Of a DNA stretch of 64,000 nucleotides, positions 1 to 9,271 are shown in pieces. Under the pieces are notes generated by a model. The model was not told where the DNA came from, did no database searches, and worked only from the letters and a program-made list of their open reading frames with translations. Each line of letters starts with the position of its first letter. Position 1 is the stretch's first letter. Source of the DNA: Basidiobolus meristosporus CBS 931.73 (lineage: Eukaryota > Fungi > Basidiobolomycota). The stretch covers positions 62,348 to 126,347 of the forward strand of contig MCFE01000216.1 of NCBI GenBank assembly GCA_002104905.1. The letters run 5' to 3'. The translations under genes and the position numbers were made by a program.

Positions 1-721
1 TAACAAGGATTGGAAGCCTGTGGAAGACGGATACTGGTCAGTAGAAATGAAGATTCCCCTCGATCGACTTTCGGCCAGAGTTTTCGATTCCCTCGGAATA
101 AAAAAAAGAGCCGAAGAAACCTCAGCGATGCCAACATATATGGGGCTCAACTTTTTAAGGTAAATTATTGAGTCTTTCGCCTGCTTAAACGCTACTAAAT
201 AGGGCAACCTCCTTTACAGAACAGGGTTCCCACCTAAAGGAGTAGTGAACATCCAAGCACAGTCTACTACCGTGCAAAGCACGGTTTCGAGTTTCTTTTT
301 GTTTGGGTTGGGTAACTTCAACACGTTGTTGAAGCGCCATGAAGTTGGGCCCAAGTACCAAACCTCCTGGTCACCGCTACACTCAAATGATATACATCAT
401 CCCGAACTTTGGGGACAAGTAATGTTCCGGAACACAACGAACACCTACAAGCCATTTGTCCCGGATCAAAGTTATCCAACAAGATTTGCCCTGATGCAGA
501 TATACTACGGAGAAAAAGCATATGCCGCGACACACGACGGAGTGTACACAGAAAACTACCAGGATTTGGATATTGATGTGCAGCTAGTCGAGGATTGCAT
601 TGGGCCGCTTAAAATTCGAACATCGGATGACGGTGTCTCATACGAGGCATCTATTAGATACCGAAAGCAAACAGGACATATACGAGAGGATAGATATCTC
701 CATTTTACTGATAACCACTAA
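1..721 (+). CDS. 3' part of a spliced carbohydrate-binding family 9-like (DOMON-like) protein; 5' end lies outside the window
   Basis: Frame from nt 2 reads NKDWKPVEDGYWSVEMKIPLDRL...PTYMGLNFLR up to a donor ag|gtaaat at 160. The downstream ORF (245-721) has WSPLHSNDIHHPELWGQVMF and ALMQIYYGEKAY..HDGVY. These match, from memory, bacterial CBM9-like proteins (W.VE..IP, NF.R, WSP....H.PE.WG...F). Internal splice sites are not fully resolved. Confidence 0.55.
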
Positions 722-1088
722 TCTTGAGGATCCACCCGTTTTCTTGACAAAAATGCCTCTGTATTCATAGCTTAAACATTCTATCAGCATCCGGTCCGTA
801 TCCATGTGTGCTCAACGAGTATTGTTATGACCTGAAGTCGTAGCATACTGCTTTATTAACTCATTTCAAAAACTGAATATCCGATAAAATATCGCAGGCA
901 TTCCATGTCCCAACCACTTTTACTTTTAATTATACTTCTGGCCATTCAACTAGCGACTAATTGTGAATGCATTGTGTTAATGCTAAGCAGCTTTTGTGTA
1001 ATAAATACTTGATGTAGTAGATATTGCTTTATTTTAATTTTACATGTATTGTAATTACAAAACCTAGGAAACATAATATTCATATAAA

Positions 1089-3302
1089 TTACTCAAACAT
1101 TGGTCCTTCTTTGAGTTCAAAGGTGAATTTGAATTGGTCGTTTTCTACTCCAATATGAACAATCGCATGTTCCAGAAGTTGGCCGGAGAGCAGAGCACGG
1201 CTCAATTGTGTCACTAGATGCTTCTCAAGGAATCTACGCACTGGTCGAGCTCCATACGTGGGGTCGTACGAGAGTCGGAGTACAAGGTCCGACGCTGCAT
1301 CCGACATCACCAGATCTATGTCCTTGTCCACCAAACGCTTCGCAATGCGCTCCACTTGGATCTTCACAATGTCACGTAGGTTGTCCTGTGACAGCGGCGA
1401 GAAGACGATGATGTCATCCAGTCGATTCAACAACTCTGGTCGGAAGTGTCCCTTCACCTGGTTCATCACAAGCTGCTTCGTTCCCTCGTCCAGCACGCCT
1501 GCATTCTCCGGATTCCCGAGTGTGTTCAGGATCAGCTCTTGACCGACATTCGAGGTGAGAATGATCACCGTGTTGCTGAAGTCCACCACCCTTCCTTGCC
1601 CATCAGTCAACCGGGCGTCATCCAACACCTCCAACAGCACATTCAGAACTTGTGGATGCGCCTTCTCCACCTCATCGAACAGCACCACCGAGTAGGGCTT
1701 GCGACGAACCACCTCCGTGAGCTGGCCACCGTCCTCGTGTCCCACGTAGCCAGGTGGTGCTCCAATCAATCTCGCCACGGAATGGGACTCCATGTACTCT
1801 GACATGTCGATACGCACCATGTACTTCTCGTCGTCAAAGAGCTCTGCTGCGAGACTCTTTGCAAGCTCAGTCTTGCCAACACCTGTGGGTCCAAGGAACA
1901 AGAATGAGCCGATCGGCTGGTTCTCACGCGCGAGTCCAGCCCGTGACCGAAGGATCGCTTCTGACACTGCAGTGACAGCCTCATCCTGGCCAATCACCCG
2001 CTCCGCCAATTTGTTGCCCAGTGAGAGTAGGCGATCGATCTGCGTCTTGGAGAGACGGGTGACCGGGATTCCGGTCCATCTGCTCACCACCTCCATGATC
2101 TGCTCCGGGCCAACTATCTCCGTGAGTAGGCGATCGTTCGTCTCCACATCCTTCATCTCCTCGTCTTCTTGCTTCTTCAGGTCCGATAGCTCCGCAATCC
2201 GTTTCTCGATATCTGGGATGGCATAGTACCGGATATCGGCCGCCTGTGCCAAGTCCCGATGACGCTCGGCCTCATCCGCCTTGTGGCGCAGCTCCTCGAG
2301 TCGCTGGTTGAGCTGGCGAATCTCGTCCAGACTTCCCTTCTCTGTTTGATACTTCAGCTTGAGTGGTCGAAGCTCCTCCTCGATCTTGAGCATCTCCTCC
2401 TGGACTCGGTGAAGTCGTTGCTGACTTGCTTGATCCTTCTCCTTGCTCAACGCTGTCGCTTCGACCTCGAGTTGCAGGTGTCTGCGCTCAAGCTGGTCAA
2501 TGATCTCTGGCTGCGAATCGAGCTGCACTCGAGTGTTGGCACACGCTTCGTCCATCAGGTCAATCGCCTTGTCAGGTAGGAATCGGTTCGTGATGTACCT
2601 GTCTGAAAGCTGCGCTGCTGCCACTAGCGCCGTGTCGAGGATCTTCACTCCGTGGTGTGCCTCGTACTTCTCCTTGAGTCCACGAAGAATACTGATCGTG
2701 TCGATCACGTTCGGCTCTCCCACAAGCACTTGCTGGAAACGACGTTCAAACGCCGCATCCTTCTCCACGTACTTCTTGTACTCGCTCAGCGTGGTGGCTC
2801 CAATGCAGCGGAGCTCTCCACGCGCAAGCATGGGCTTCAACAGATTCGCCGCGTCCATGGAGCCCTCACTCTTCCCTGCCCCAAGGACGAGGTGGATCTC
2901 GTCGATGAACAGAATGATCGGCGTCTCCGAGTCTTTGATCTCCTTGAGGACTCCCTTCAGTCTCTCCTCAAACTCTCCACGGTACTTGGCCCCTGCGACC
3001 AGTGCTCCCATGTCCAGCGAGAAGAGCTTGCACTGCAGGTTGGTGGGGACATCCTTGCGAACGATTCTGGCTGCAAGTCCTTCCACCACAGCAGTCTTGC
3101 CGACACCAGGCTCGCCGATGAGCACCGGGTTGTTCTTTGTTCTACGGGAGAGGACTCGGATCACTCGGCGGATCTCTTCGTCACGTCCAATTACGGGGTC
3201 GAGTTTTCCCTTCTCTGCCATTTCGGTCATATCAATGGCGTATTTGGATAATGATTCGTAAGGACCTTGTTGGTCTGCTTCAGGTTGTGTGTAGTTACTC
3301 AT
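1089..3302 (-). CDS. HSP104: Hsp104/Hsp101/ClpB-family disaggregase lacking the N-terminal domain (737 aa, intronless)
   Basis: NBD1 Walker A GEPGVGKT and Walker B LFIDE, coiled-coil middle domain, NBD2 GPTGVGKT and LFDE, pore loop GYVG. Starts [21 protein letters not shown], only ~15 aa before NBD1, with ATG in aaatcATG context. Confidence 0.92.
1194..3253 (-). repeat. Left arm of a 2,060-bp inverted repeat (partner 4432-6491)
   Basis: Line-by-line reverse-complement comparison gave 12 mismatches in 2,060 bp (~99.4%), all synonymous third positions, and no indels. Confidence 0.95.
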
Positions 3303-3403
3303 GATTTTTTAAAGTCTTCTTTAAGAGGATAAGTTTCTAACGTGATAATGTACAATGTAAGTGAAAGTGAAAGTGATTTTTCATCAGTCGATTTCTTGTT
3401 TCT

Positions 3404-3413
3404 TTTATATGAA
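3404..3413 (-). promoter_or_regulatory. TATA box (TTCATATAAA) of the short HSP104 copy
   Basis: Reverse complement of tcttttatatgaag; ~100 bp upstream of ATG 3302. The same 10-mer precedes the long copy. Confidence 0.6.
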
Positions 3414-3449
3414 GGGTTGGTTCCTTTTTGATATACACTAGATACCACG

Positions 3450-3464
3450 AGAATTTCCTCGAAT
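3450..3464. promoter_or_regulatory. Three-unit heat-shock element with one mismatch (aGAAttTCCtcGAAt)
   Basis: Fits nGAAnnTTCnnGAAn with TTC>TCC; lies between the divergent Hsp104 genes. Confidence 0.55.
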
Positions 3465-3489
3465 AGCCAGGAGCTTGCATGATTCTCCG

Positions 3490-3504
3490 TGAATATTCTG
3501 GAAC
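3490..3504. promoter_or_regulatory. Perfect three-unit heat-shock element (tGAAtaTTCtgGAAc)
   Basis: Exact HSF consensus nGAAnnTTCnnGAAn in the 657-bp divergent intergenic region of two Hsp104 genes. Confidence 0.8.
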
Positions 3505-3889
3505 CATTGGCTAAACAGAGTAGCCAAATTCCGAGGATATATTGAATGACGATTGGCTGATGACTTACCAGTAGCGATTTGATTGATATGCAAACGTTCA
3601 TTTGAACGCGCTTCGAGTTAGTCATTTTCTTTTTATGCTAAAATTCTACGTCACTCCTTGGTACTCCGCCAAGGGAGACGTCAGGCTTACGTTGCTTTAG
3701 GATGCATATAATCTAAACCCAACTCTTTACCATGAGTAAGCCTCTAAGCCACTGTGTATCTAAATCGATTAACACGTGGTTAAAATCCCCCAGTTGAGAT
3801 TGTATTATCCAATCATTATGAGAGAGAACCTTCTCAACGTAACTGGTGGTTTGTGGAATTTACCTGAATGAATCAAGGACTGCTCTTGA

Positions 3890-3899
3890 TTCATATAAA
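3890..3899 (+). promoter_or_regulatory. TATA box (TTCATATAAA) of the full-length HSP104 copy
   Basis: gattcatataaat, ~60 bp upstream of ATG 3960. Confidence 0.6.
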
Positions 3900-3959
3900 T
3901 ATGATTCCGAGCAGATACAAATAACTTCAATATTCGAAATTTCGTCAGTCTCTTAGAAA

Positions 3960-6596
3960 ATGAATCCAGAACAGTTCACAGAAAAAACTCTAAAAGTCAT
4001 ATCCGCTGCTATTGAACTAGCTCGCGAACATGGCCACATTCAGTTGTCACCGATACATATAGCCTGCGCTTTGTTTAGCGACACCGATAACTTTTTGAAA
4101 ATGGCCATTCAAAAGGCTGGCGGTGACCCCAAGGTACCTGAACGTACTTTCGGTCGGTTGTTGACAAAACTTCCGTCGCAAAGTCCCCCGCCCGACCCAA
4201 GTTTATCTTCGCAGGCATTACAAGTCATTCAAGAAGCTCAAAAGATCCAAAAGGAAAACGGAGATTCCCACGTCTCTATAGACGTGCTTATTCGGGCGCT
4301 GGCAAAACAAAAACAAATCTCGGACGTGCTACTTGATGCTGGAGTTAGCCAAAAATTACTGGAGGCTACCCTAGCTAAAATTCGTGGAAACCGTAAAGTA
4401 GACAGCGCCACTACTGAAAATTCATATGATGCATTATCCAAATACGCCATTGATATGACCGAAATGGCAGAGAAGGGAAAACTCGACCCCGTAATTGGAC
4501 GTGACGAAGAGATCCGCCGAGTGATCCGAGTCCTCTCCCGTAGAACAAAGAACAACCCGGTGCTCATCGGCGAGCCTGGTGTCGGCAAGACTGCTGTGGT
4601 GGAAGGACTTGCAGCCAGAATCGTTCGCAAGGATGTCCCCACCAACCTGCAGTGCAAGCTCTTCTCGCTGGACATGGGAGCACTGGTCGCAGGGGCCAAG
4701 TACCGTGGAGAGTTTGAGGAGAGACTGAAGGGAGTCCTCAAGGAGATCAAAGACTCGGAGACGCCGATCATTCTGTTCATCGACGAGATCCACCTCGTCC
4801 TTGGGGCAGGGAAGAGTGAGGGCTCCATGGACGCGGCGAATCTGTTGAAGCCCATGCTTGCGCGTGGAGAGCTCCGCTGCATTGGGGCCACCACGCTGAG
4901 CGAGTACAAGAAGTACGTGGAGAAGGATGCGGCGTTTGAGCGTCGTTTCCAGCAAGTGCTCGTGGGAGAGCCGAACGTGATCGACACGATCAGTATTCTT
5001 CGTGGACTCAAGGAGAAGTACGAGGCACACCACGGAGTGAAGATCCTCGACACGGCGCTAGTGGCAGCAGCGCAGCTTTCAGACAGGTACATCACGAACC
5101 GATTCCTACCTGACAAGGCGATTGACCTGATGGACGAAGCGTGTGCAAACACTCGAGTGCAGCTCGATTCGCAGCCAGAGATCATTGACCAGCTTGAGCG
5201 CAGACACCTGCAACTCGAGGTCGAAGCGACAGCGTTGAGCAAGGAGAAGGATCAAGCGAGTCAGCAACGACTTCACCGAGTCCAGGAGGAGATGCTCAAG
5301 ATTGAGGAGGAGCTTCGACCACTCAAGCTGAAGTATCAAACAGAGAAGGGAAGTCTGGATGAGATTCGCCAGCTCAACCAGCGACTCGAGGAGCTGCGCC
5401 ACAAGGCGGATGAGGCCGAGCGTCATCGGGACTTGGCACAGGCGGCCGATATCCGGTACTATGCCATTCCAGATATCGAGAAACGGATTGCGGAGCTATC
5501 GGACCTCAAGAAGCAAGAAGACGAGGAGATGAAGGATGTGGAGACGAACGATCGCCTACTCACGGAGATAGTTGGCCCGGAGCAGATCATGGAGGTGGTG
5601 AGCAGATGGACCGGAATCCCGGTCACCCGTCTCTCCAAGACACAGATCGATCGCCTACTCTCACTGGGCAACAAATTGGCGGAGCGGGTGATTGGCCAGG
5701 ATGAGGCTGTCACTGCAGTGTCAGAAGCGATCCTTCGGTCACGGGCTGGACTCGCGCGTGAGAACCAGCCGATCGGCTCATTCTTGTTCCTTGGACCCAC
5801 AGGTGTTGGCAAGACTGAGCTTGCAAAGAGTCTCGCGGCAGAGCTCTTTGACGACGAGAAGTACATGGTGCGTATCGACATGTCAGAGTACATGGAGTCC
5901 CATTCCGTGGCGAGATTGATTGGAGCGCCACCTGGCTACGTGGGACACGAGGACGGTGGCCAGCTCACGGAGGTGGTTCGTCGCAAGCCCTACTCGGTGG
6001 TGCTGTTCGATGAGGTGGAGAAGGCGCATCCACAAGTTCTGAATGTGCTGTTGGAGGTGTTGGATGACGCCCGGTTGACTGATGGGCAAGGAAGGGTGGT
6101 GGACTTCAGCAACACGGTGATCATTCTCACCTCGAATGTCGGTCAAGAGCTGATCCTGAACACACTCGGGAATCCGGAGAATGCAGGCGTGCTGGACGAG
6201 GGAACGAAGCAGCTTGTGATGAACCAGGTGAAGGGACACTTCCGACCAGAGTTGTTGAATCGACTGGATGACATCATCGTCTTCTCGCCGCTGTCACAGG
6301 ACAACCTACGTGACATTGTGAAGATCCAAGTGGAGCGCATTGCGAAGCGTTTGGTGGACAAGGACATAGATCTGGTGATGTCGGATGCAGCGTCGGACCT
6401 TGTACTCCGACTCTCGTACGACCCCACGTATGGAGCTCGACCAGTGCGTAGATTCCTTGAGAAGCATCTAGTGACACAATTGAGCCGTGCTTTGCTCTCT
6501 GGCCAGCTCCTAGAGCACACGATTGTCACCGTTAATGCACAAGGGGACAATTTCGTATTTGACATGGAAACCAAGCAAGTCGCTATGCTCGACTAA
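3960..6596 (+). CDS. HSP104: Full-length cytosolic Hsp104/Hsp101 disaggregase (878 aa, intronless)
   Basis: Clp N-terminal double repeat ([10 protein letters not shown]...HLL-like motifs, HVSIDVLI) followed by two AAA+ modules and a middle domain. Confidence 0.95.
4432..6491 (+). repeat. Right arm of the 2,060-bp inverted repeat (partner 1194-3253)
   Basis: As for the left arm; all mismatches lie between 4886 and 5927. Confidence 0.95.
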
Positions 6597-7061
6597 TAGC
6601 TTTACAAATGTAGCCACCCTCCAACATGATTTTGCCTTTATGTAAATTTTATCCGGTATATTATTGAATGTTATTTCTGATAATCATCAAGCATCATAAC
6701 TATAAATAAACATACACTATCTTGTAATTATTGAATACTCATAAATCTCGAGATGATTTTTTGAAACAAGACAGCTTCCGCAAGTTGATGTTTCAATATG
6801 CCCTTGGTTACACAACAGAGTAAAGTATATTCGGAAACTGTAACGTTACATTGGCTTGTGCATTACCTTTCACAAATTATCTCGTATGATACAATATCAA
6901 GCGGACAATTGGTTGATTTGGTGTTGATTATCTCTCTGTGAACCCCATCCTAAAGCGCAAGAACGTTGTTGTTTGTATCGTGTAGTACAAATAGTATATT
7001 TAGTTGCCTGAGAGATGATTTGGATGAATTACTGTTAGTTTATTAAGCAGGTAAAAGATGT

Positions 7062-8129
7062 CTAACACCATGGTCCAAATTTGAGATCCCAATAAGTCAT
7101 GTGGGAAATAATATCCACAGGTAAGTAACCACGGATACAATCTCTATCCTCAGTTAAGGAACCATCGTTACAATGGACAGTTTTACCGGTGAACCAATGA
7201 ATATAAACTTCATGAGGGGAATGTTGGAATCCAAAGGAGTCGGGAGGAAGATGGGGAACAGGGTCGTTCTTAGATGTAACACGAATCATGTTGTTACCAA
7301 TGGTGGAGTTGGAAAGTGTCTTGTATGCCAATTTAGCAAATTTTGGGTTCCCAACCCTTGGTTGCCCATAGGTACGCAAGAGGATATTCGCGGGATTAAT
7401 GGTTTTTGTTGGTGGTGTAATACAGCGTGGACTCTTCGGATTCAACAAATGGTTTTTGATCTCCATCGCACCAAGAACAGCTACTGCACCACCCTATGCC
7501 GTCCAAATACGTTAAAGAAATATTTTACAATGAAATAGGGATGGGTTCTCTTACCAGGGAGTGACCTGTCACTACGAGCTCATAATCCTCAGGATCACTG
7601 GGAAGTTGATCAACAACTTTCTTCAAGCCTTCAATGACATCTTCTGATACGCTGTTGAAGGCTTTTAAGAATCCGCCGTGAACCATGGTATCCTTTTCAG
7701 CACCAGGATAGGTAAAGTCCAACGGGAGGAAATCAAAATCGTGAAGCCAATTGCGAATGTTGGCTGATCTGTCAAGAGGAAACAATAAATATTGGTGCGT
7801 TGGTAGAAGTAGGAAACTCTTCGCACATACCCTCTAAATGCTACGATAATGGTCTTCTCTTTATGATTTACACCGACGTAGCCTGCTAGCCCGCTTAGCA
7901 AGTCAGAGAAATAGGAGGTTACTTTTACGTCTCCTACACAGCGACTGCCACAATCCCACTTCATTACACGGGACTTCAGGCAGTAACTGGCAGCGGCATA
8001 GTTACCATGGCGAATTAACATCTCCTTGGTCTGAGCGCTAACTACAGAACCATCACGTCTTGCTAGGGGAACTGCAGCTAGCGAAGAGATTACTGCACAG
8101 CAGAAAGTCAAGGTAGGAATAAGTCTCAT
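7062..8129 (-). CDS. Secreted class-3 triacylglycerol lipase (Rhizomucor-type), copy 1; exons 8129-7831, 7768-7555, 7493-7062
   Basis: Signal peptide MRLIPTLTFCCAVISSLAA; IVAFRG|S..NIRNW lid region; GHSL|GG nucleophile motif split by an intron; TYGQPRVGN; NDPVPHLPP; catalytic His in SHMTY. Two GT-AG introns of 62 and 61 nt restore the frame. Confidence 0.92.
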
Positions 8130-8372
8130 CGAACAGATAACCAAGTGTATGAGTTGTAGCTCTCTCTAGAGGTGACTATTTATAATAAAACGCGTTACCC
8201 AATGTTCCAAATACCCTACTTTCTACTTTCTTTTTCTTCCCATCTACATTCTCTGGATGTAGGTCAGGCTTTGATTTTAACGAATTCTATTGATGGTTGA
8301 AATGCACCTACAACTTGATTAAGAAGTTTGCGGCAATCTTCTCTGAGTTCGTTTATCTTGTAACCTTGAGAT

Positions 8373-8389
8373 TGCATATACACGTGAAA
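8373..8389 (-). promoter_or_regulatory. Conserved 17-bp E-box-containing element TTTCACGTGTATATGCA upstream of lipase copy 1
   Basis: Identical 17-mer at 54515-54531 upstream of lipase copy 2, in the same orientation relative to the gene. Confidence 0.6.
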
Positions 8390-9271
8390 GCACCCATATA
8401 ACCACGAAAACTGGTACGATGACCAGTTTGTCAACAATTGCTATTGCAGGATCATCAAGAAGCCCGAAAAATAAAAGACTCACGGAAAAACCATGAATAT
8501 ACTTTTGTGAAAGAAAATTAATCCGCTCGACGCTTTAGTGCTACTATTCTGAAATTTTTGCAGTAACGTAAGTTGGCATATTTGTTGTATTGGGATGTGC
8601 CGTCGTCGCCAATATCCATCTATGATTATAACTCAGCCCAGCTTGTTTGGAAGTTTATTATATAAATAGACCAGAAATTTAGATTAAATATTGGCCTACT
8701 TGACACAATAATATATGGCGTTGGTATTGGATCAATTCAAGGGTATTTTGCTAGCTCGCATTGTAATACAAGTAATATGCCTCTCCCCTGCCCAACTCAC
8801 CCAGAATTCCAAGTATTCTACCAACTGTTTCGAGAATCCCAAAACTTTGGCTTCCTAACTGTCGACTTTGCCGCTGAATTGTTTGAACGTTGCGTTTTCC
8901 GCTTATTGAAATACCCATTGCAGGATAACACTGATCATTTTGTCAAAGCTATGAGATTCATCACTTGAAAGTTTTAGTGCATCATGCCAGTACATCAAAA
9001 TCAAAGATATATCATAGGAGCCATCTGCCGCATCATATTTTCAGTTAACACGTTTCGATAAAAAAATGCTATTCCAGATGATTGAAAAAATCCCATGAAG
9101 CAAAGGTTAGCTCTTCATACTAGTGTTCTATCCTTTTCCCTTTCCCTATGTTGACAGGCTATTTCTGTTGATAATGTATGAGGTTGGTAGTGGTCAAGTT
9201 TTAAAATTTGCTTTGTGTTTATGCTATTCATAGTCTATGTTCCTTGAGTGCATCAACTCTCTACTTGATAG

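What the first reader, a model, noticed from the sequence alone, without database searches (positions are those of the whole stretch)
1194..6491. Hsp104 gene pair as a homogenised inverted repeat around a potentially flippable 1.18-kb promoter/N-terminus cassette
Seen: the two 2,060-bp cores differ by 12 synonymous substitutions only. Identity stops abruptly at both ends, and the same-length C-tails are heavily diverged ([27 protein letters not shown] vs [27 protein letters not shown]), as are the N-termini. So this is an old duplication whose core is still being homogenised. Established: close inverted repeats undergo gene conversion, and crossover between them inverts the spacer. Inference: inverting 3254-4431 (both promoters plus both N-termini) would leave both ORFs intact and swap C-tails, giving four Hsp104 isoforms (NTD+/- x tail A/B) from one locus. 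That would be an invertible chaperone-isoform switch, which I do not know to be described in fungi.
Basis: partly seen in the sequence, partly recalled or inferred. Interest (0 to 1): 0.8.

Follow-up and report, generated by a model that had tools for sequence, protein, structure and literature searches.

The report
Homogenised head-to-head Hsp104 gene pair
Two back-to-front copies of the protein-disaggregating chaperone Hsp104, one full length and one lacking its first domain, keep 2 kb of their coding sequence almost identical by repeatedly copying it from one to the other; this is a clear example of a known process, and nothing shows that the DNA between them works as a flip switch.

Summary
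Arms 1194-3253 and 4432-6491 are a 2,060-bp inverted repeat with 12 differences, all synonymous. They sit inside two divergently transcribed Hsp104/ClpB genes: 878 aa with the N-domain, and 737 aa without it.

"Old duplication, core still being homogenised" is well supported.
- Synonymous divergence jumps from 0.025 in the core to saturation at the first codon past it.
- A relative about 9% diverged has the same architecture, with its own collapsed, double-depth core.
- A second contig of the same assembly shows polymorphisms shared between the paralogues.
- GC3 is 0.68 in the core and 0.40 in the N-domain of the same gene.

The "invertible isoform switch" is not supported.
- Inversion would keep both reading frames, but both available contigs have the same orientation.
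- There is no recombinase nearby.
- The swapped 27-aa tail is the least conserved part of the family.
- Earlier notes of this scan report many similar homogenised head-to-head pairs elsewhere in this genome, so the scan has found this kind before on other DNA.

The neighbouring LDH pair is inverted between the two contigs. Repeat-mediated flipping therefore appears to happen here as ordinary structural variation.

Verdict: a new member of a known kind.

The parts
3960..6596 (+). Full-length Hsp104/ClpB gene (878 aa): Clp_N, AAA, AAA_lid_9, AAA_2, ClpB_D2-small
   Evidence: ORF and translation. Pfam domains. Aligns end to end with solved Hsp104/ClpB structures, E = 0.
1089..3302 (-). Short Hsp104 gene (737 aa). 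It has a 14-aa unique N-terminus and then matches the long form from its residue ~156. It has no Clp_N domain.
   Evidence: ORF and translation. Pfam finds no Clp_N. The spacer holds no remnant of the N-domain. The collection's gene call P0003 is only a fragment of this ORF, residues 15-721.
1194..3253 (-). Arm A of the homogenised core (2,060 bp)
   Evidence: In run X2 it forms one collapsed contig with exactly these ends.
4432..6491 (+). Arm B of the homogenised core (2,060 bp). It differs from arm A at 12 synonymous sites: 4886, 4940, 4961, 5147, 5258, 5303, 5360, 5468, 5507, 5642, 5837, 5927.
3254..4431 (.). Spacer (1,178 bp): 5' end of the short gene, the intergenic region, and the N-domain plus linker codons of the long gene. 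This is the segment that a crossover between the arms would invert.
   Evidence: In-silico inversion keeps both ORFs. A single spacer contig is found in X1 (3224-4461) and in the diverged relative X4 (3202-4483).
3303..3959 (.). Divergent promoter region. Heat-shock elements lie at 3451-3463 and 3486-3503; the latter contains the only perfect 3-unit HSE of the 64-kb window, at 3491-3503. A further HSE lies at 3856-3868. TATA-like boxes lie at 3403-3409 (for the minus gene) and 3894-3900 (for the plus gene).
   Evidence: Pattern scan. Contigs of run X3, which look like RNA, end at 3361 and start at 3943 (weak evidence).
6492..6596 (+). Tail B with the transition zone: codons 845-878 of the long gene, plus the stop codon
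   Evidence: tail dS about 1.65, dN 0.43. This is the least conserved stretch of the family.
1089..1193 (-). Tail A with the transition zone: codons 704-737 of the short gene, plus the stop codon

Best explanation
This is an ancient head-to-head (divergent) pair of Hsp104/ClpB disaggregase genes. One is full length. The other begins just after the N-terminal domain. Each has its own TATA box and heat-shock elements in the shared 657-bp intergenic region. The 2.06-kb stretch that encodes both AAA+ modules and the middle domain is kept nearly identical by repeated, still active, non-reciprocal copying between the two arms (interlocus gene conversion, i.e. concerted evolution).

On the N side, the tract stops where homology itself ends. 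On the C side, it stops where the fast-evolving last 27 codons have diverged too far to support heteroduplex.

The practical result is a two-gene version of the long/short ClpB isoform pair, with identical motor cores. A crossover between the arms would invert the spacer and swap the tails. That is a possible by-product of the same recombination and not a demonstrated or regulated function.

Shown: the repeat, the synonymous-site pattern, a collapsed core in a relative, polymorphisms shared between the paralogues, and the GC3 step. Inferred: the conversion mechanism, heat inducibility, mixed hexamers, and the cause of the boundaries.
For: 1. Core dS is 0.025 with dN 0 over 686 codons. In the 12 codons immediately outside the core (704-715), pS is 0.8 although the amino acids are conserved, and tail dS is about 1.65. 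Protein-level selection cannot explain identity at silent sites.
2. In run X4, a relative whose core differs from the window at 177 of 2,054 positions, the spacer is one contig (3202-4483) that reaches into both arms. The core is one 2,064-bp contig at 62.5x against 28.2x for the spacer. The two arms are therefore alike within that organism too. Their boundaries are shifted by about 23 and 27 bp relative to the window, which indicates independent events.
3. A second contig of the same assembly (L003, about 99.5% identical) carries the same locus. Among the four arms there are 20 variable sites, all at third codon positions: 3 fixed paralogue differences, 2 sites polymorphic in both paralogues (5468, 5642) and 15 singletons. 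Pairwise distances are 8-13 for paralogous and allelic comparisons alike. Contigs X1/X2 carry the L003 alleles in the unique flanks (1025, 1051, 3540), so that haplotype is real.
4. Allelic differences are denser in the cores (19 in 4,120 bp) than in the unique sequence around them (5 in 3,028 bp; P = 0.04).
5. GC3 is 0.68 in the core and 0.40 in the N-domain of the same gene (P = 1.5e-10; four-fold sites 0.62 vs 0.41, P = 0.001). It ramps up and down inside both edges of the core, as GC-biased conversion would produce.
6. The tail is the least conserved 27-aa stretch of the family: column conservation 0.35 against 0.79 for the core.
7. The same kind of homogenised inverted pair is known for hsp70 genes in Drosophila (PMC6995229, PMC3924832) and for a yeast sporulation gene pair (PMC9731477).
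Against: The cross-species evidence rests on contigs of one run (X4) and on depth ratios. I could not retrieve the sequences to build a tree. The phase of the variable sites on the small contig L003 could be partly scrambled by long-read polishing. The alternating pattern of fixed and shared sites (5360 P, 5468 X, 5507 P, 5642 X, 5927 P) needs several short events or a phasing error. The GC3 contrast could in part reflect different codon constraints in the N-domain. The most recent events left both edges identical and the centre different, which is not what a single simple tract predicts.
Confidence: 0.85

Rival explanations
1. Unregulated flip polymorphism. Homologous recombination between the arms occasionally inverts the 1.18-kb spacer, so both orientations, and hence all four N-terminus x tail combinations, exist among nuclei, haplotypes or strains. 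This would be without regulation or a dedicated function. It can coexist with the best explanation.
For: The geometry allows it, because both ORFs stay intact after in-silico inversion. The neighbouring head-to-head LDH pair (L002 arms 1173-2095 and 3737-4660, 98.2% alike, 1.64-kb spacer) is inverted between the two contigs of the assembly. Its flanks are colinear and the exchange point lies inside the arms. Two Hsp104 sites (5468, 5642) show a reciprocal pattern (A2=B3, A3=B2), which a flip followed by a flip back would also give. The yeast chromosome XIV flip/flop region behaves this way (PMC9731477).
Against: Both contigs carrying the Hsp104 pair have the same orientation and identical tails and N-termini. 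The protein clusters contain no chimeric form (one member sequence each). Short-read graphs cannot tell the orientation. The LDH inversion itself could be a mis-threading of the assembler through 0.9-kb arms.
Confidence: 0.25
2. Programmed invertible switch. Inversion is frequent or induced, for example by heat, and is used to change which tail is attached to the long and the short Hsp104.
For: Only the permissive geometry and the existence of regulated inverted-repeat flip/flop switching in some yeasts (PMC5720833).
Against: Only one orientation is seen. No recombinase, transposase or RNA element lies in or beside the locus. The promoters travel with the N-termini, so expression control would not change. 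The swapped part is the least constrained 27 aa of the protein, and both tails keep the same terminal Met-hydrophobic-acidic ending. Dozens of notes describe similar inverted pairs of unrelated genes in this genome.
Confidence: 0.03
3. A recent partial duplication and not conversion. A 2.06-kb piece was copied once, about 0.6% divergence ago, and nothing has happened since.
For: The N-side boundary coincides with the end of all detectable homology, as a duplication breakpoint would.
Against: The tails are homologous, of equal length and saturated at silent sites, so the two genes are far older than the core identity. A relative about 9% diverged has the same pair with its own identical arms and shifted boundaries. 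Polymorphisms are shared between the paralogues and the differences are clustered. There is a long-term GC3 signature.
Confidence: 0.03
4. An assembly or polishing artefact makes two diverged genes look identical.
For: Long-read polishing can homogenise repeats. The assembly is a long-read one (PMC7466969 says the strain I take this to be was sequenced with PacBio).
Against: Contigs built independently from other runs collapse the core exactly at 1194 and 3253 and branch there. At sites where the four copies split 3:1 those contigs carry the majority allele, and at 2:2 sites they vary between runs. All variable sites are synonymous third positions, which errors would not be.
Confidence: 0.02

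Closest known systems
Inverted hsp70 gene pairs of Drosophila (hsp70 at 87A7 in D. melanogaster; the hsp70 A/B pair of D. subobscura), which evolve in concert by ectopic gene conversion (PMC6995229 citing Puig Giribets et al. 2019; review PMC3924832)
   Same: A heat-shock chaperone gene pair with heat-shock elements, whose coding regions are homogenised within a genome by gene conversion. Polymorphisms are shared between the two paralogues.
   Different: Here the family is Hsp104/ClpB. The two genes are not equivalent, since one lacks the N-domain. The conversion tract stops inside the coding sequence, leaving different N-termini and tails.
The 24-kb flip/flop region of Saccharomyces chromosome XIV, bounded by a continually homogenised 4-kb inverted repeat of sporulation genes (Salzberg et al. 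2022, PMC9731477)
   Same: A fungal inverted repeat made of gene pairs and kept alike within strains and species by repeated homogenisation. Inversion of what lies between is an unregulated by-product, stable on laboratory timescales.
   Different: There both orientations are documented in many strains, and whole genes lie in the arms. Here only one orientation is seen at the Hsp104 pair. The spacer is 1.2 kb, and the breakpoints would lie inside two coding sequences.
Flip/flop mating-type switching in Ogataea polymorpha (PMC5720833)
   Same: Recombination between inverted repeats inverts a chromosomal segment and changes what is expressed.
   Different: That inversion is induced by starvation through a defined pathway, and it changes expression through position next to a centromere. 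None of this is shown or suggested here.
ClpB95/ClpB80 of E. coli: a long and an N-domain-less isoform that form mixed oligomers and cooperate (summarised in PMC6941012)
   Same: A full-length and an N-domain-less disaggregase with otherwise identical sequence. The short form starts at the same place, just after the N-domain. Solved N-domain-less constructs align from residues 142-149 of the long form.
   Different: In bacteria both isoforms come from one gene by internal translation initiation. Here they come from two genes with separate promoters, whose cores are kept identical by conversion. Mixed hexamers are inferred and not shown.
Gene conversion with raised GC content in mammalian Hsp70 paralogues (Kudla et al. 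2004, pmid 15084682; only the reference was seen, and the content is from my memory)
   Same: Silent-site GC is raised in the converted part of chaperone paralogues.
   Different: Different family and lineage. Here the contrast is seen within a single gene, between the converted core and the unconverted N-domain.

Membership tests
Concerted evolution of paralogues by interlocus gene conversion | Silent-site identity inside a tract is far higher than in adjoining homologous sequence of the same genes | tested here: met
   Core dS 0.025. In codons 704-715 pS is 0.8, and tail dS is about 1.65.
Concerted evolution of paralogues by interlocus gene conversion | Paralogues are more alike within a genome than orthologues are between species | tested here: met
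   In run X4 the core is one 2,064-bp contig at 2.2 times the spacer depth and differs from the window at 177 sites. The spacer contig enters both arms. This rests on contigs and depth only. No tree could be built.
Concerted evolution of paralogues by interlocus gene conversion | Polymorphisms shared between paralogues, giving incompatible site patterns | tested here: met
   Sites 5468 and 5642 are polymorphic in both arms, while 5360, 5507 and 5927 are fixed differences. Phasing on the small contig is not independently verified.
Programmed invertible DNA switch (flip/flop) | Both orientations present in one strain or population | tested here: inconclusive
   Two contigs show the same orientation. 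Short-read contigs cannot resolve it. No long reads were available.
Programmed invertible DNA switch (flip/flop) | A dedicated recombinase or a regulated induction of the inversion | tested here: not met
   The neighbours are LDH, CBM9, lipase, a PHM7/RSN1 channel and PP2C. There are no recombinase domains. The spacer ORF has no Pfam match, and there are no Rfam matches. Induction is not testable here.
Programmed invertible DNA switch (flip/flop) | Orientation changes the product or its expression | tested here: met
   In-silico inversion swaps only the 27-aa tails and the 3' flanks. The promoters stay with their N-termini.
Hsp104/ClpB class-1 AAA+ disaggregase | Clp_N domain, two AAA+ modules with a lid/middle region, and the D2-small domain | tested here: met
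   The long form has all of them. The short form has all except Clp_N. The long form aligns over its full length to solved Hsp104/ClpB chains, E = 0.
ClpB95/ClpB80-type long/short isoform pair | Both isoforms are made from one gene by internal initiation | tested here: not met
   There are two separate ORFs on opposite strands, each with its own upstream region. It may work like the bacterial pair but is not a member of that arrangement.
ClpB95/ClpB80-type long/short isoform pair | The isoforms co-assemble and cooperate | not testable with these tools
   Inferred only from the identical cores.

The most novel reading that the evidence does not exclude
The Hsp104 spacer really does flip by homologous recombination at an appreciable rate, as the neighbouring LDH pair appears to have done. 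A culture or population would then carry both orientations and all four N-terminus x tail combinations. Selection for compatible mixed hexamers of long and short subunits would be what keeps the conversion tract intact.
Probability: 0.15. Interest if true: 0.6.

Novelty: new member of a known kind. Interest (0 to 1): 0.4.

Why it matters
This is a very clean natural example of concerted evolution. Several independent signatures are visible in one 5.5-kb locus:
- a one-nucleotide-sharp jump in silent divergence;
- a GC3 step inside a single gene;
- polymorphisms shared between the paralogues;
- a relative with its own homogenised arms.

It also shows a eukaryote encoding the long and the N-domain-less disaggregase as two genes with identical motor cores. 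Bacteria obtain the same pair from one gene, so the role of mixed Hsp104 hexamers becomes testable in a fungus. Together with the many similar pairs noted in this genome and the LDH inversion between contigs, it suggests that Basidiobolus is a good system for measuring conversion and inversion rates at inverted gene pairs. It does not establish a new kind of switch.

Tried and rejected
- **Orthologous loci.** The word-based protein search found no relative above 69% identity apart from the window's own two proteins. The metagenome scan found nothing above 64% (those loci, some from gut metagenomes, were not used further). No paralogue tree across species could therefore be built.
- **Top foreign hit.** The 'Albugo candida' protein P0002 scores high only because its gene model repeats an internal segment. 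It is 61% identical and irrelevant.
- **N-domain remnant upstream of the short gene.** Only chance-level matches.
- **RNA families in 1-9000.** None.
- **Pfam on the 108-aa spacer ORF and on flanking ORFs.** Nothing but a lipase fragment.
- **Homology beyond the stop codons.** None detectable.
- **Literature.** No paper holds both Hsp104 and Basidiobolus. The assembly accession was not found in the paper library. The organism name (Basidiobolus meristosporus CBS 931.73) therefore rests on my memory of the accession and on another agent's note, not on a tool result.
- **Spacer orientation or SNP phase from the laid contigs.** Impossible, because 31-mer contigs break or collapse in the repeat.


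Full report
**What is there**

The window holds a single large inverted repeat: arms 1159-3260 and 4425-6526, 2,102 nt, 99% complementary, 1,164 nt apart.

Base by base, the near-perfect core is 1194-3253 against 4432-6491. It is 2,060 bp long with 12 differences, every one a synonymous third-position change.

The arms lie inside two divergently transcribed ORFs.
- 3960-6596 (+) encodes an 878-aa protein with Clp_N, two AAA+ modules, the lid and the D2-small domain.
- 1089-3302 (-) encodes a 737-aa protein with everything except Clp_N.
- The long form aligns end to end with solved Hsp104/ClpB structures.
- The short form has 14 unique residues and then runs in register with the long form from about its residue 156.
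- The spacer holds no remnant of an N-domain.

**The 657-bp intergenic region**

- It holds the only perfect three-unit heat-shock element of the 64-kb window, at 3491-3503. That element is extended to four units from 3486.
- Two further one-mismatch elements lie at 3451 and 3856.
- A TATA-like box faces each gene, at 3403-3409 and 3894-3900.
- It has no Rfam match, and the 108-aa ORF in it has no Pfam match.

**Where the DNA comes from**

The window is the last 64 kb of contig MCFE01000216.1 of assembly GCA_002104905.1. From memory this is Basidiobolus meristosporus CBS 931.73, and another agent's note names the same species. I could not confirm the accession in the paper library. The closest foreign proteins are only about 69% identical and come from Zoopagomycota and other early-diverging fungi.

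**Is the near-identity real?**

Contigs made independently from two runs of one sample (X1, X2) support it.
- They collapse the core into one contig with ends exactly at 1194 and 3253.
- They give a single spacer contig (3224-4461) that runs 30 bp into each arm.
- They give flank contigs that stop 30 bp inside the core.

A second contig of the same assembly (MCFE01001241.1, L003, 12.5 kb, about 99.5% identical) carries the same locus. The alleles that distinguish it in unique sequence (1025, 1051, 3540) are the ones the X1/X2 contigs carry. It is therefore a real second haplotype or very recent duplicate.

At sites where the four arm copies split 3:1, the short-read contigs carry the majority allele. 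At 2:2 sites they differ between runs or break. All variable sites are synonymous third positions. An assembly artefact is therefore very unlikely.

**Old duplication, young core**

- Silent divergence is 0.025 in the core, with no amino-acid change in 686 codons.
- In the 12 codons just beyond the core, 8 carry synonymous changes although 11 amino acids are kept (pS 0.8).
- Over the tail, dS is about 1.65 and dN 0.43.
- No homology is detectable beyond the stop codons.
- On the N side, identity drops to chance within seven bases. That edge is probably where homology itself ends.

**Conversion is ongoing, not a single past event**

1. In run X4, a relative whose core differs from the window at 177 of about 2,054 positions, the spacer is again one contig (3202-4483) reaching into both arms. 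The core is one 2,064-bp contig at 62.5x against 28.2x. The arms are therefore alike within that organism as well, with edges shifted by about 23 and 27 bp.
2. Among the four arms of the two contigs there are 20 variable sites: 3 fixed paralogue differences (5360, 5507, 5927), 2 sites polymorphic in both paralogues (5468, 5642) and 15 singletons. Paralogous and allelic distances are the same, 8-13.
3. Allelic differences are about 2.8 times denser in the cores than in the surrounding unique sequence (P = 0.04). This is the expected side effect of conversion.
4. The 12 differences of the window are clustered in the middle of the core (P = 0.004), so more than one event is needed.
5. GC3 is 0.68 in the core and 0.40 in the N-domain of the same gene (P = 1.5e-10). 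It rises and falls gradually inside both edges, as long-term GC-biased conversion would produce.

**Why the C-side boundary sits where it does**

In an alignment of 57 family members, the last 27 residues are the least conserved 27-aa stretch of the protein (0.35 against 0.79 for the core). No window inside the core is as low. Fast divergence there would by itself end the homology that conversion needs. Both tails keep the family's terminal Met-hydrophobic-acidic ending, so both look functional but not obviously different in function.

**The flip hypothesis**

The geometry is right. Inverting 3254-4431 in silico gives an 878-aa ORF ending in tail A and a 737-aa ORF ending in tail B. This means two states of the locus, with two isoforms each.

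Nothing shows that it happens at this pair.
- Both contigs have the same orientation, with identical N-termini and tails.
- The protein clusters hold no chimeric member.
- No recombinase lies nearby.
- The promoters would travel with the N-termini.
- Contigs from 31-mers cannot tell the orientation, and no long reads could be laid.
- The two reciprocal-looking sites (5468, 5642) are interleaved with fixed differences. They fit short conversions, shared polymorphism or phasing error at least as well as a flip followed by a flip back.

One observation does speak for repeat-mediated inversion in this genome. About 1.4-4.9 kb before the window's first base, 2.5 kb from the short Hsp104 gene, lies a head-to-head lactate dehydrogenase pair (L002 arms 1173-2095 and 3737-4660, 98.2% alike, 1.64-kb spacer). 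It is inverted between the two contigs. Its flanks are colinear on both sides, and the exchange lies inside the arms near their outer ends. This is what a crossover between inverted repeats gives. An assembler mis-threading through 0.9-kb arms would look the same, so it needs read-level confirmation.

**Context**

Notes of this scan list many other head-to-head pairs with homogenised cores in the same genome: hexokinase, LEUNIG-like, cullin, LEA-like and others. Two follow-ups reached the same verdict as here. The Hsp104 pair is thus one instance of a genome-wide habit.

Known parallels are:
- the inverted hsp70 pairs of Drosophila (PMC6995229, PMC3924832);
- the homogenised inverted repeat around the yeast chromosome XIV flip/flop region, where inversion is recurrent but unregulated (PMC9731477);
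- the regulated Ogataea mating-type flip/flop (PMC5720833);
- for the long/short protein pair, E. coli ClpB95/ClpB80 (PMC6941012).

**Verdict**

This is a real and unusually well-documented case of concerted evolution in an inverted Hsp104 long/short gene pair (confidence 0.85). Occasional unregulated inversion is possible (about 0.25). A programmed isoform switch is unsupported (about 0.03).

Noticed in passing
L002 1173-4660 (about 1.4-4.9 kb before the window's first base) versus L003 468-3955: A head-to-head lactate dehydrogenase pair (arms 923 bp, 98.2% alike, 1.64-kb spacer) is inverted between the two contigs of the same assembly. The flanks are colinear, and the exchange point lies inside the arms near their outer ends. 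This is either a real repeat-mediated inversion polymorphism or an assembler mis-threading.
   Followed up: partly
window 2148-3361, 3943-4444, 5438-6491 (run X3): Run X3 covers only genic parts, at very high depth. It does not cover the intergenic 3362-3942 or either tail, so it looks like RNA although it is recorded as 'DNA?'. Its contig runs from the core straight into the short gene's 5' end up to 3361. The N-domain contig starts at 3943 and is about 7 times shallower. This hints that both genes are transcribed and that the short form is the more abundant. The missing tails are unexplained.
   Followed up: no
window 3960-6596: There is a sharp composition step inside one gene. GC3 is 0.40 in the N-domain and 0.68 in the converted core, and overall GC is about 0.36-0.48 outside the arms against 0.52-0.59 inside.
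   Followed up: yes
window 1140-3260 (protein P0003): The public collection's gene call for the short Hsp104 is a 707-aa fragment without start or stop codon, covering residues 15-721 of the 737-aa ORF. The N-domain-less gene is therefore not properly annotated.
   Followed up: yes
L001 10001-13787 (GCA_040437565.1, labelled Albugo candida): The 1,200-aa Hsp104 model there repeats an internal segment: residues of about 232-555 of the family appear twice. This is a tandem partial duplication or an assembly/annotation artefact. It is unrelated to the window.
   Followed up: partly
window 4061-4090 (run X2): X2 contigs break inside the N-domain at about 4061-4090, with a 21-letter loose end, although the two assembly contigs do not differ there. 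This may be a third variant or a read artefact.
   Followed up: no
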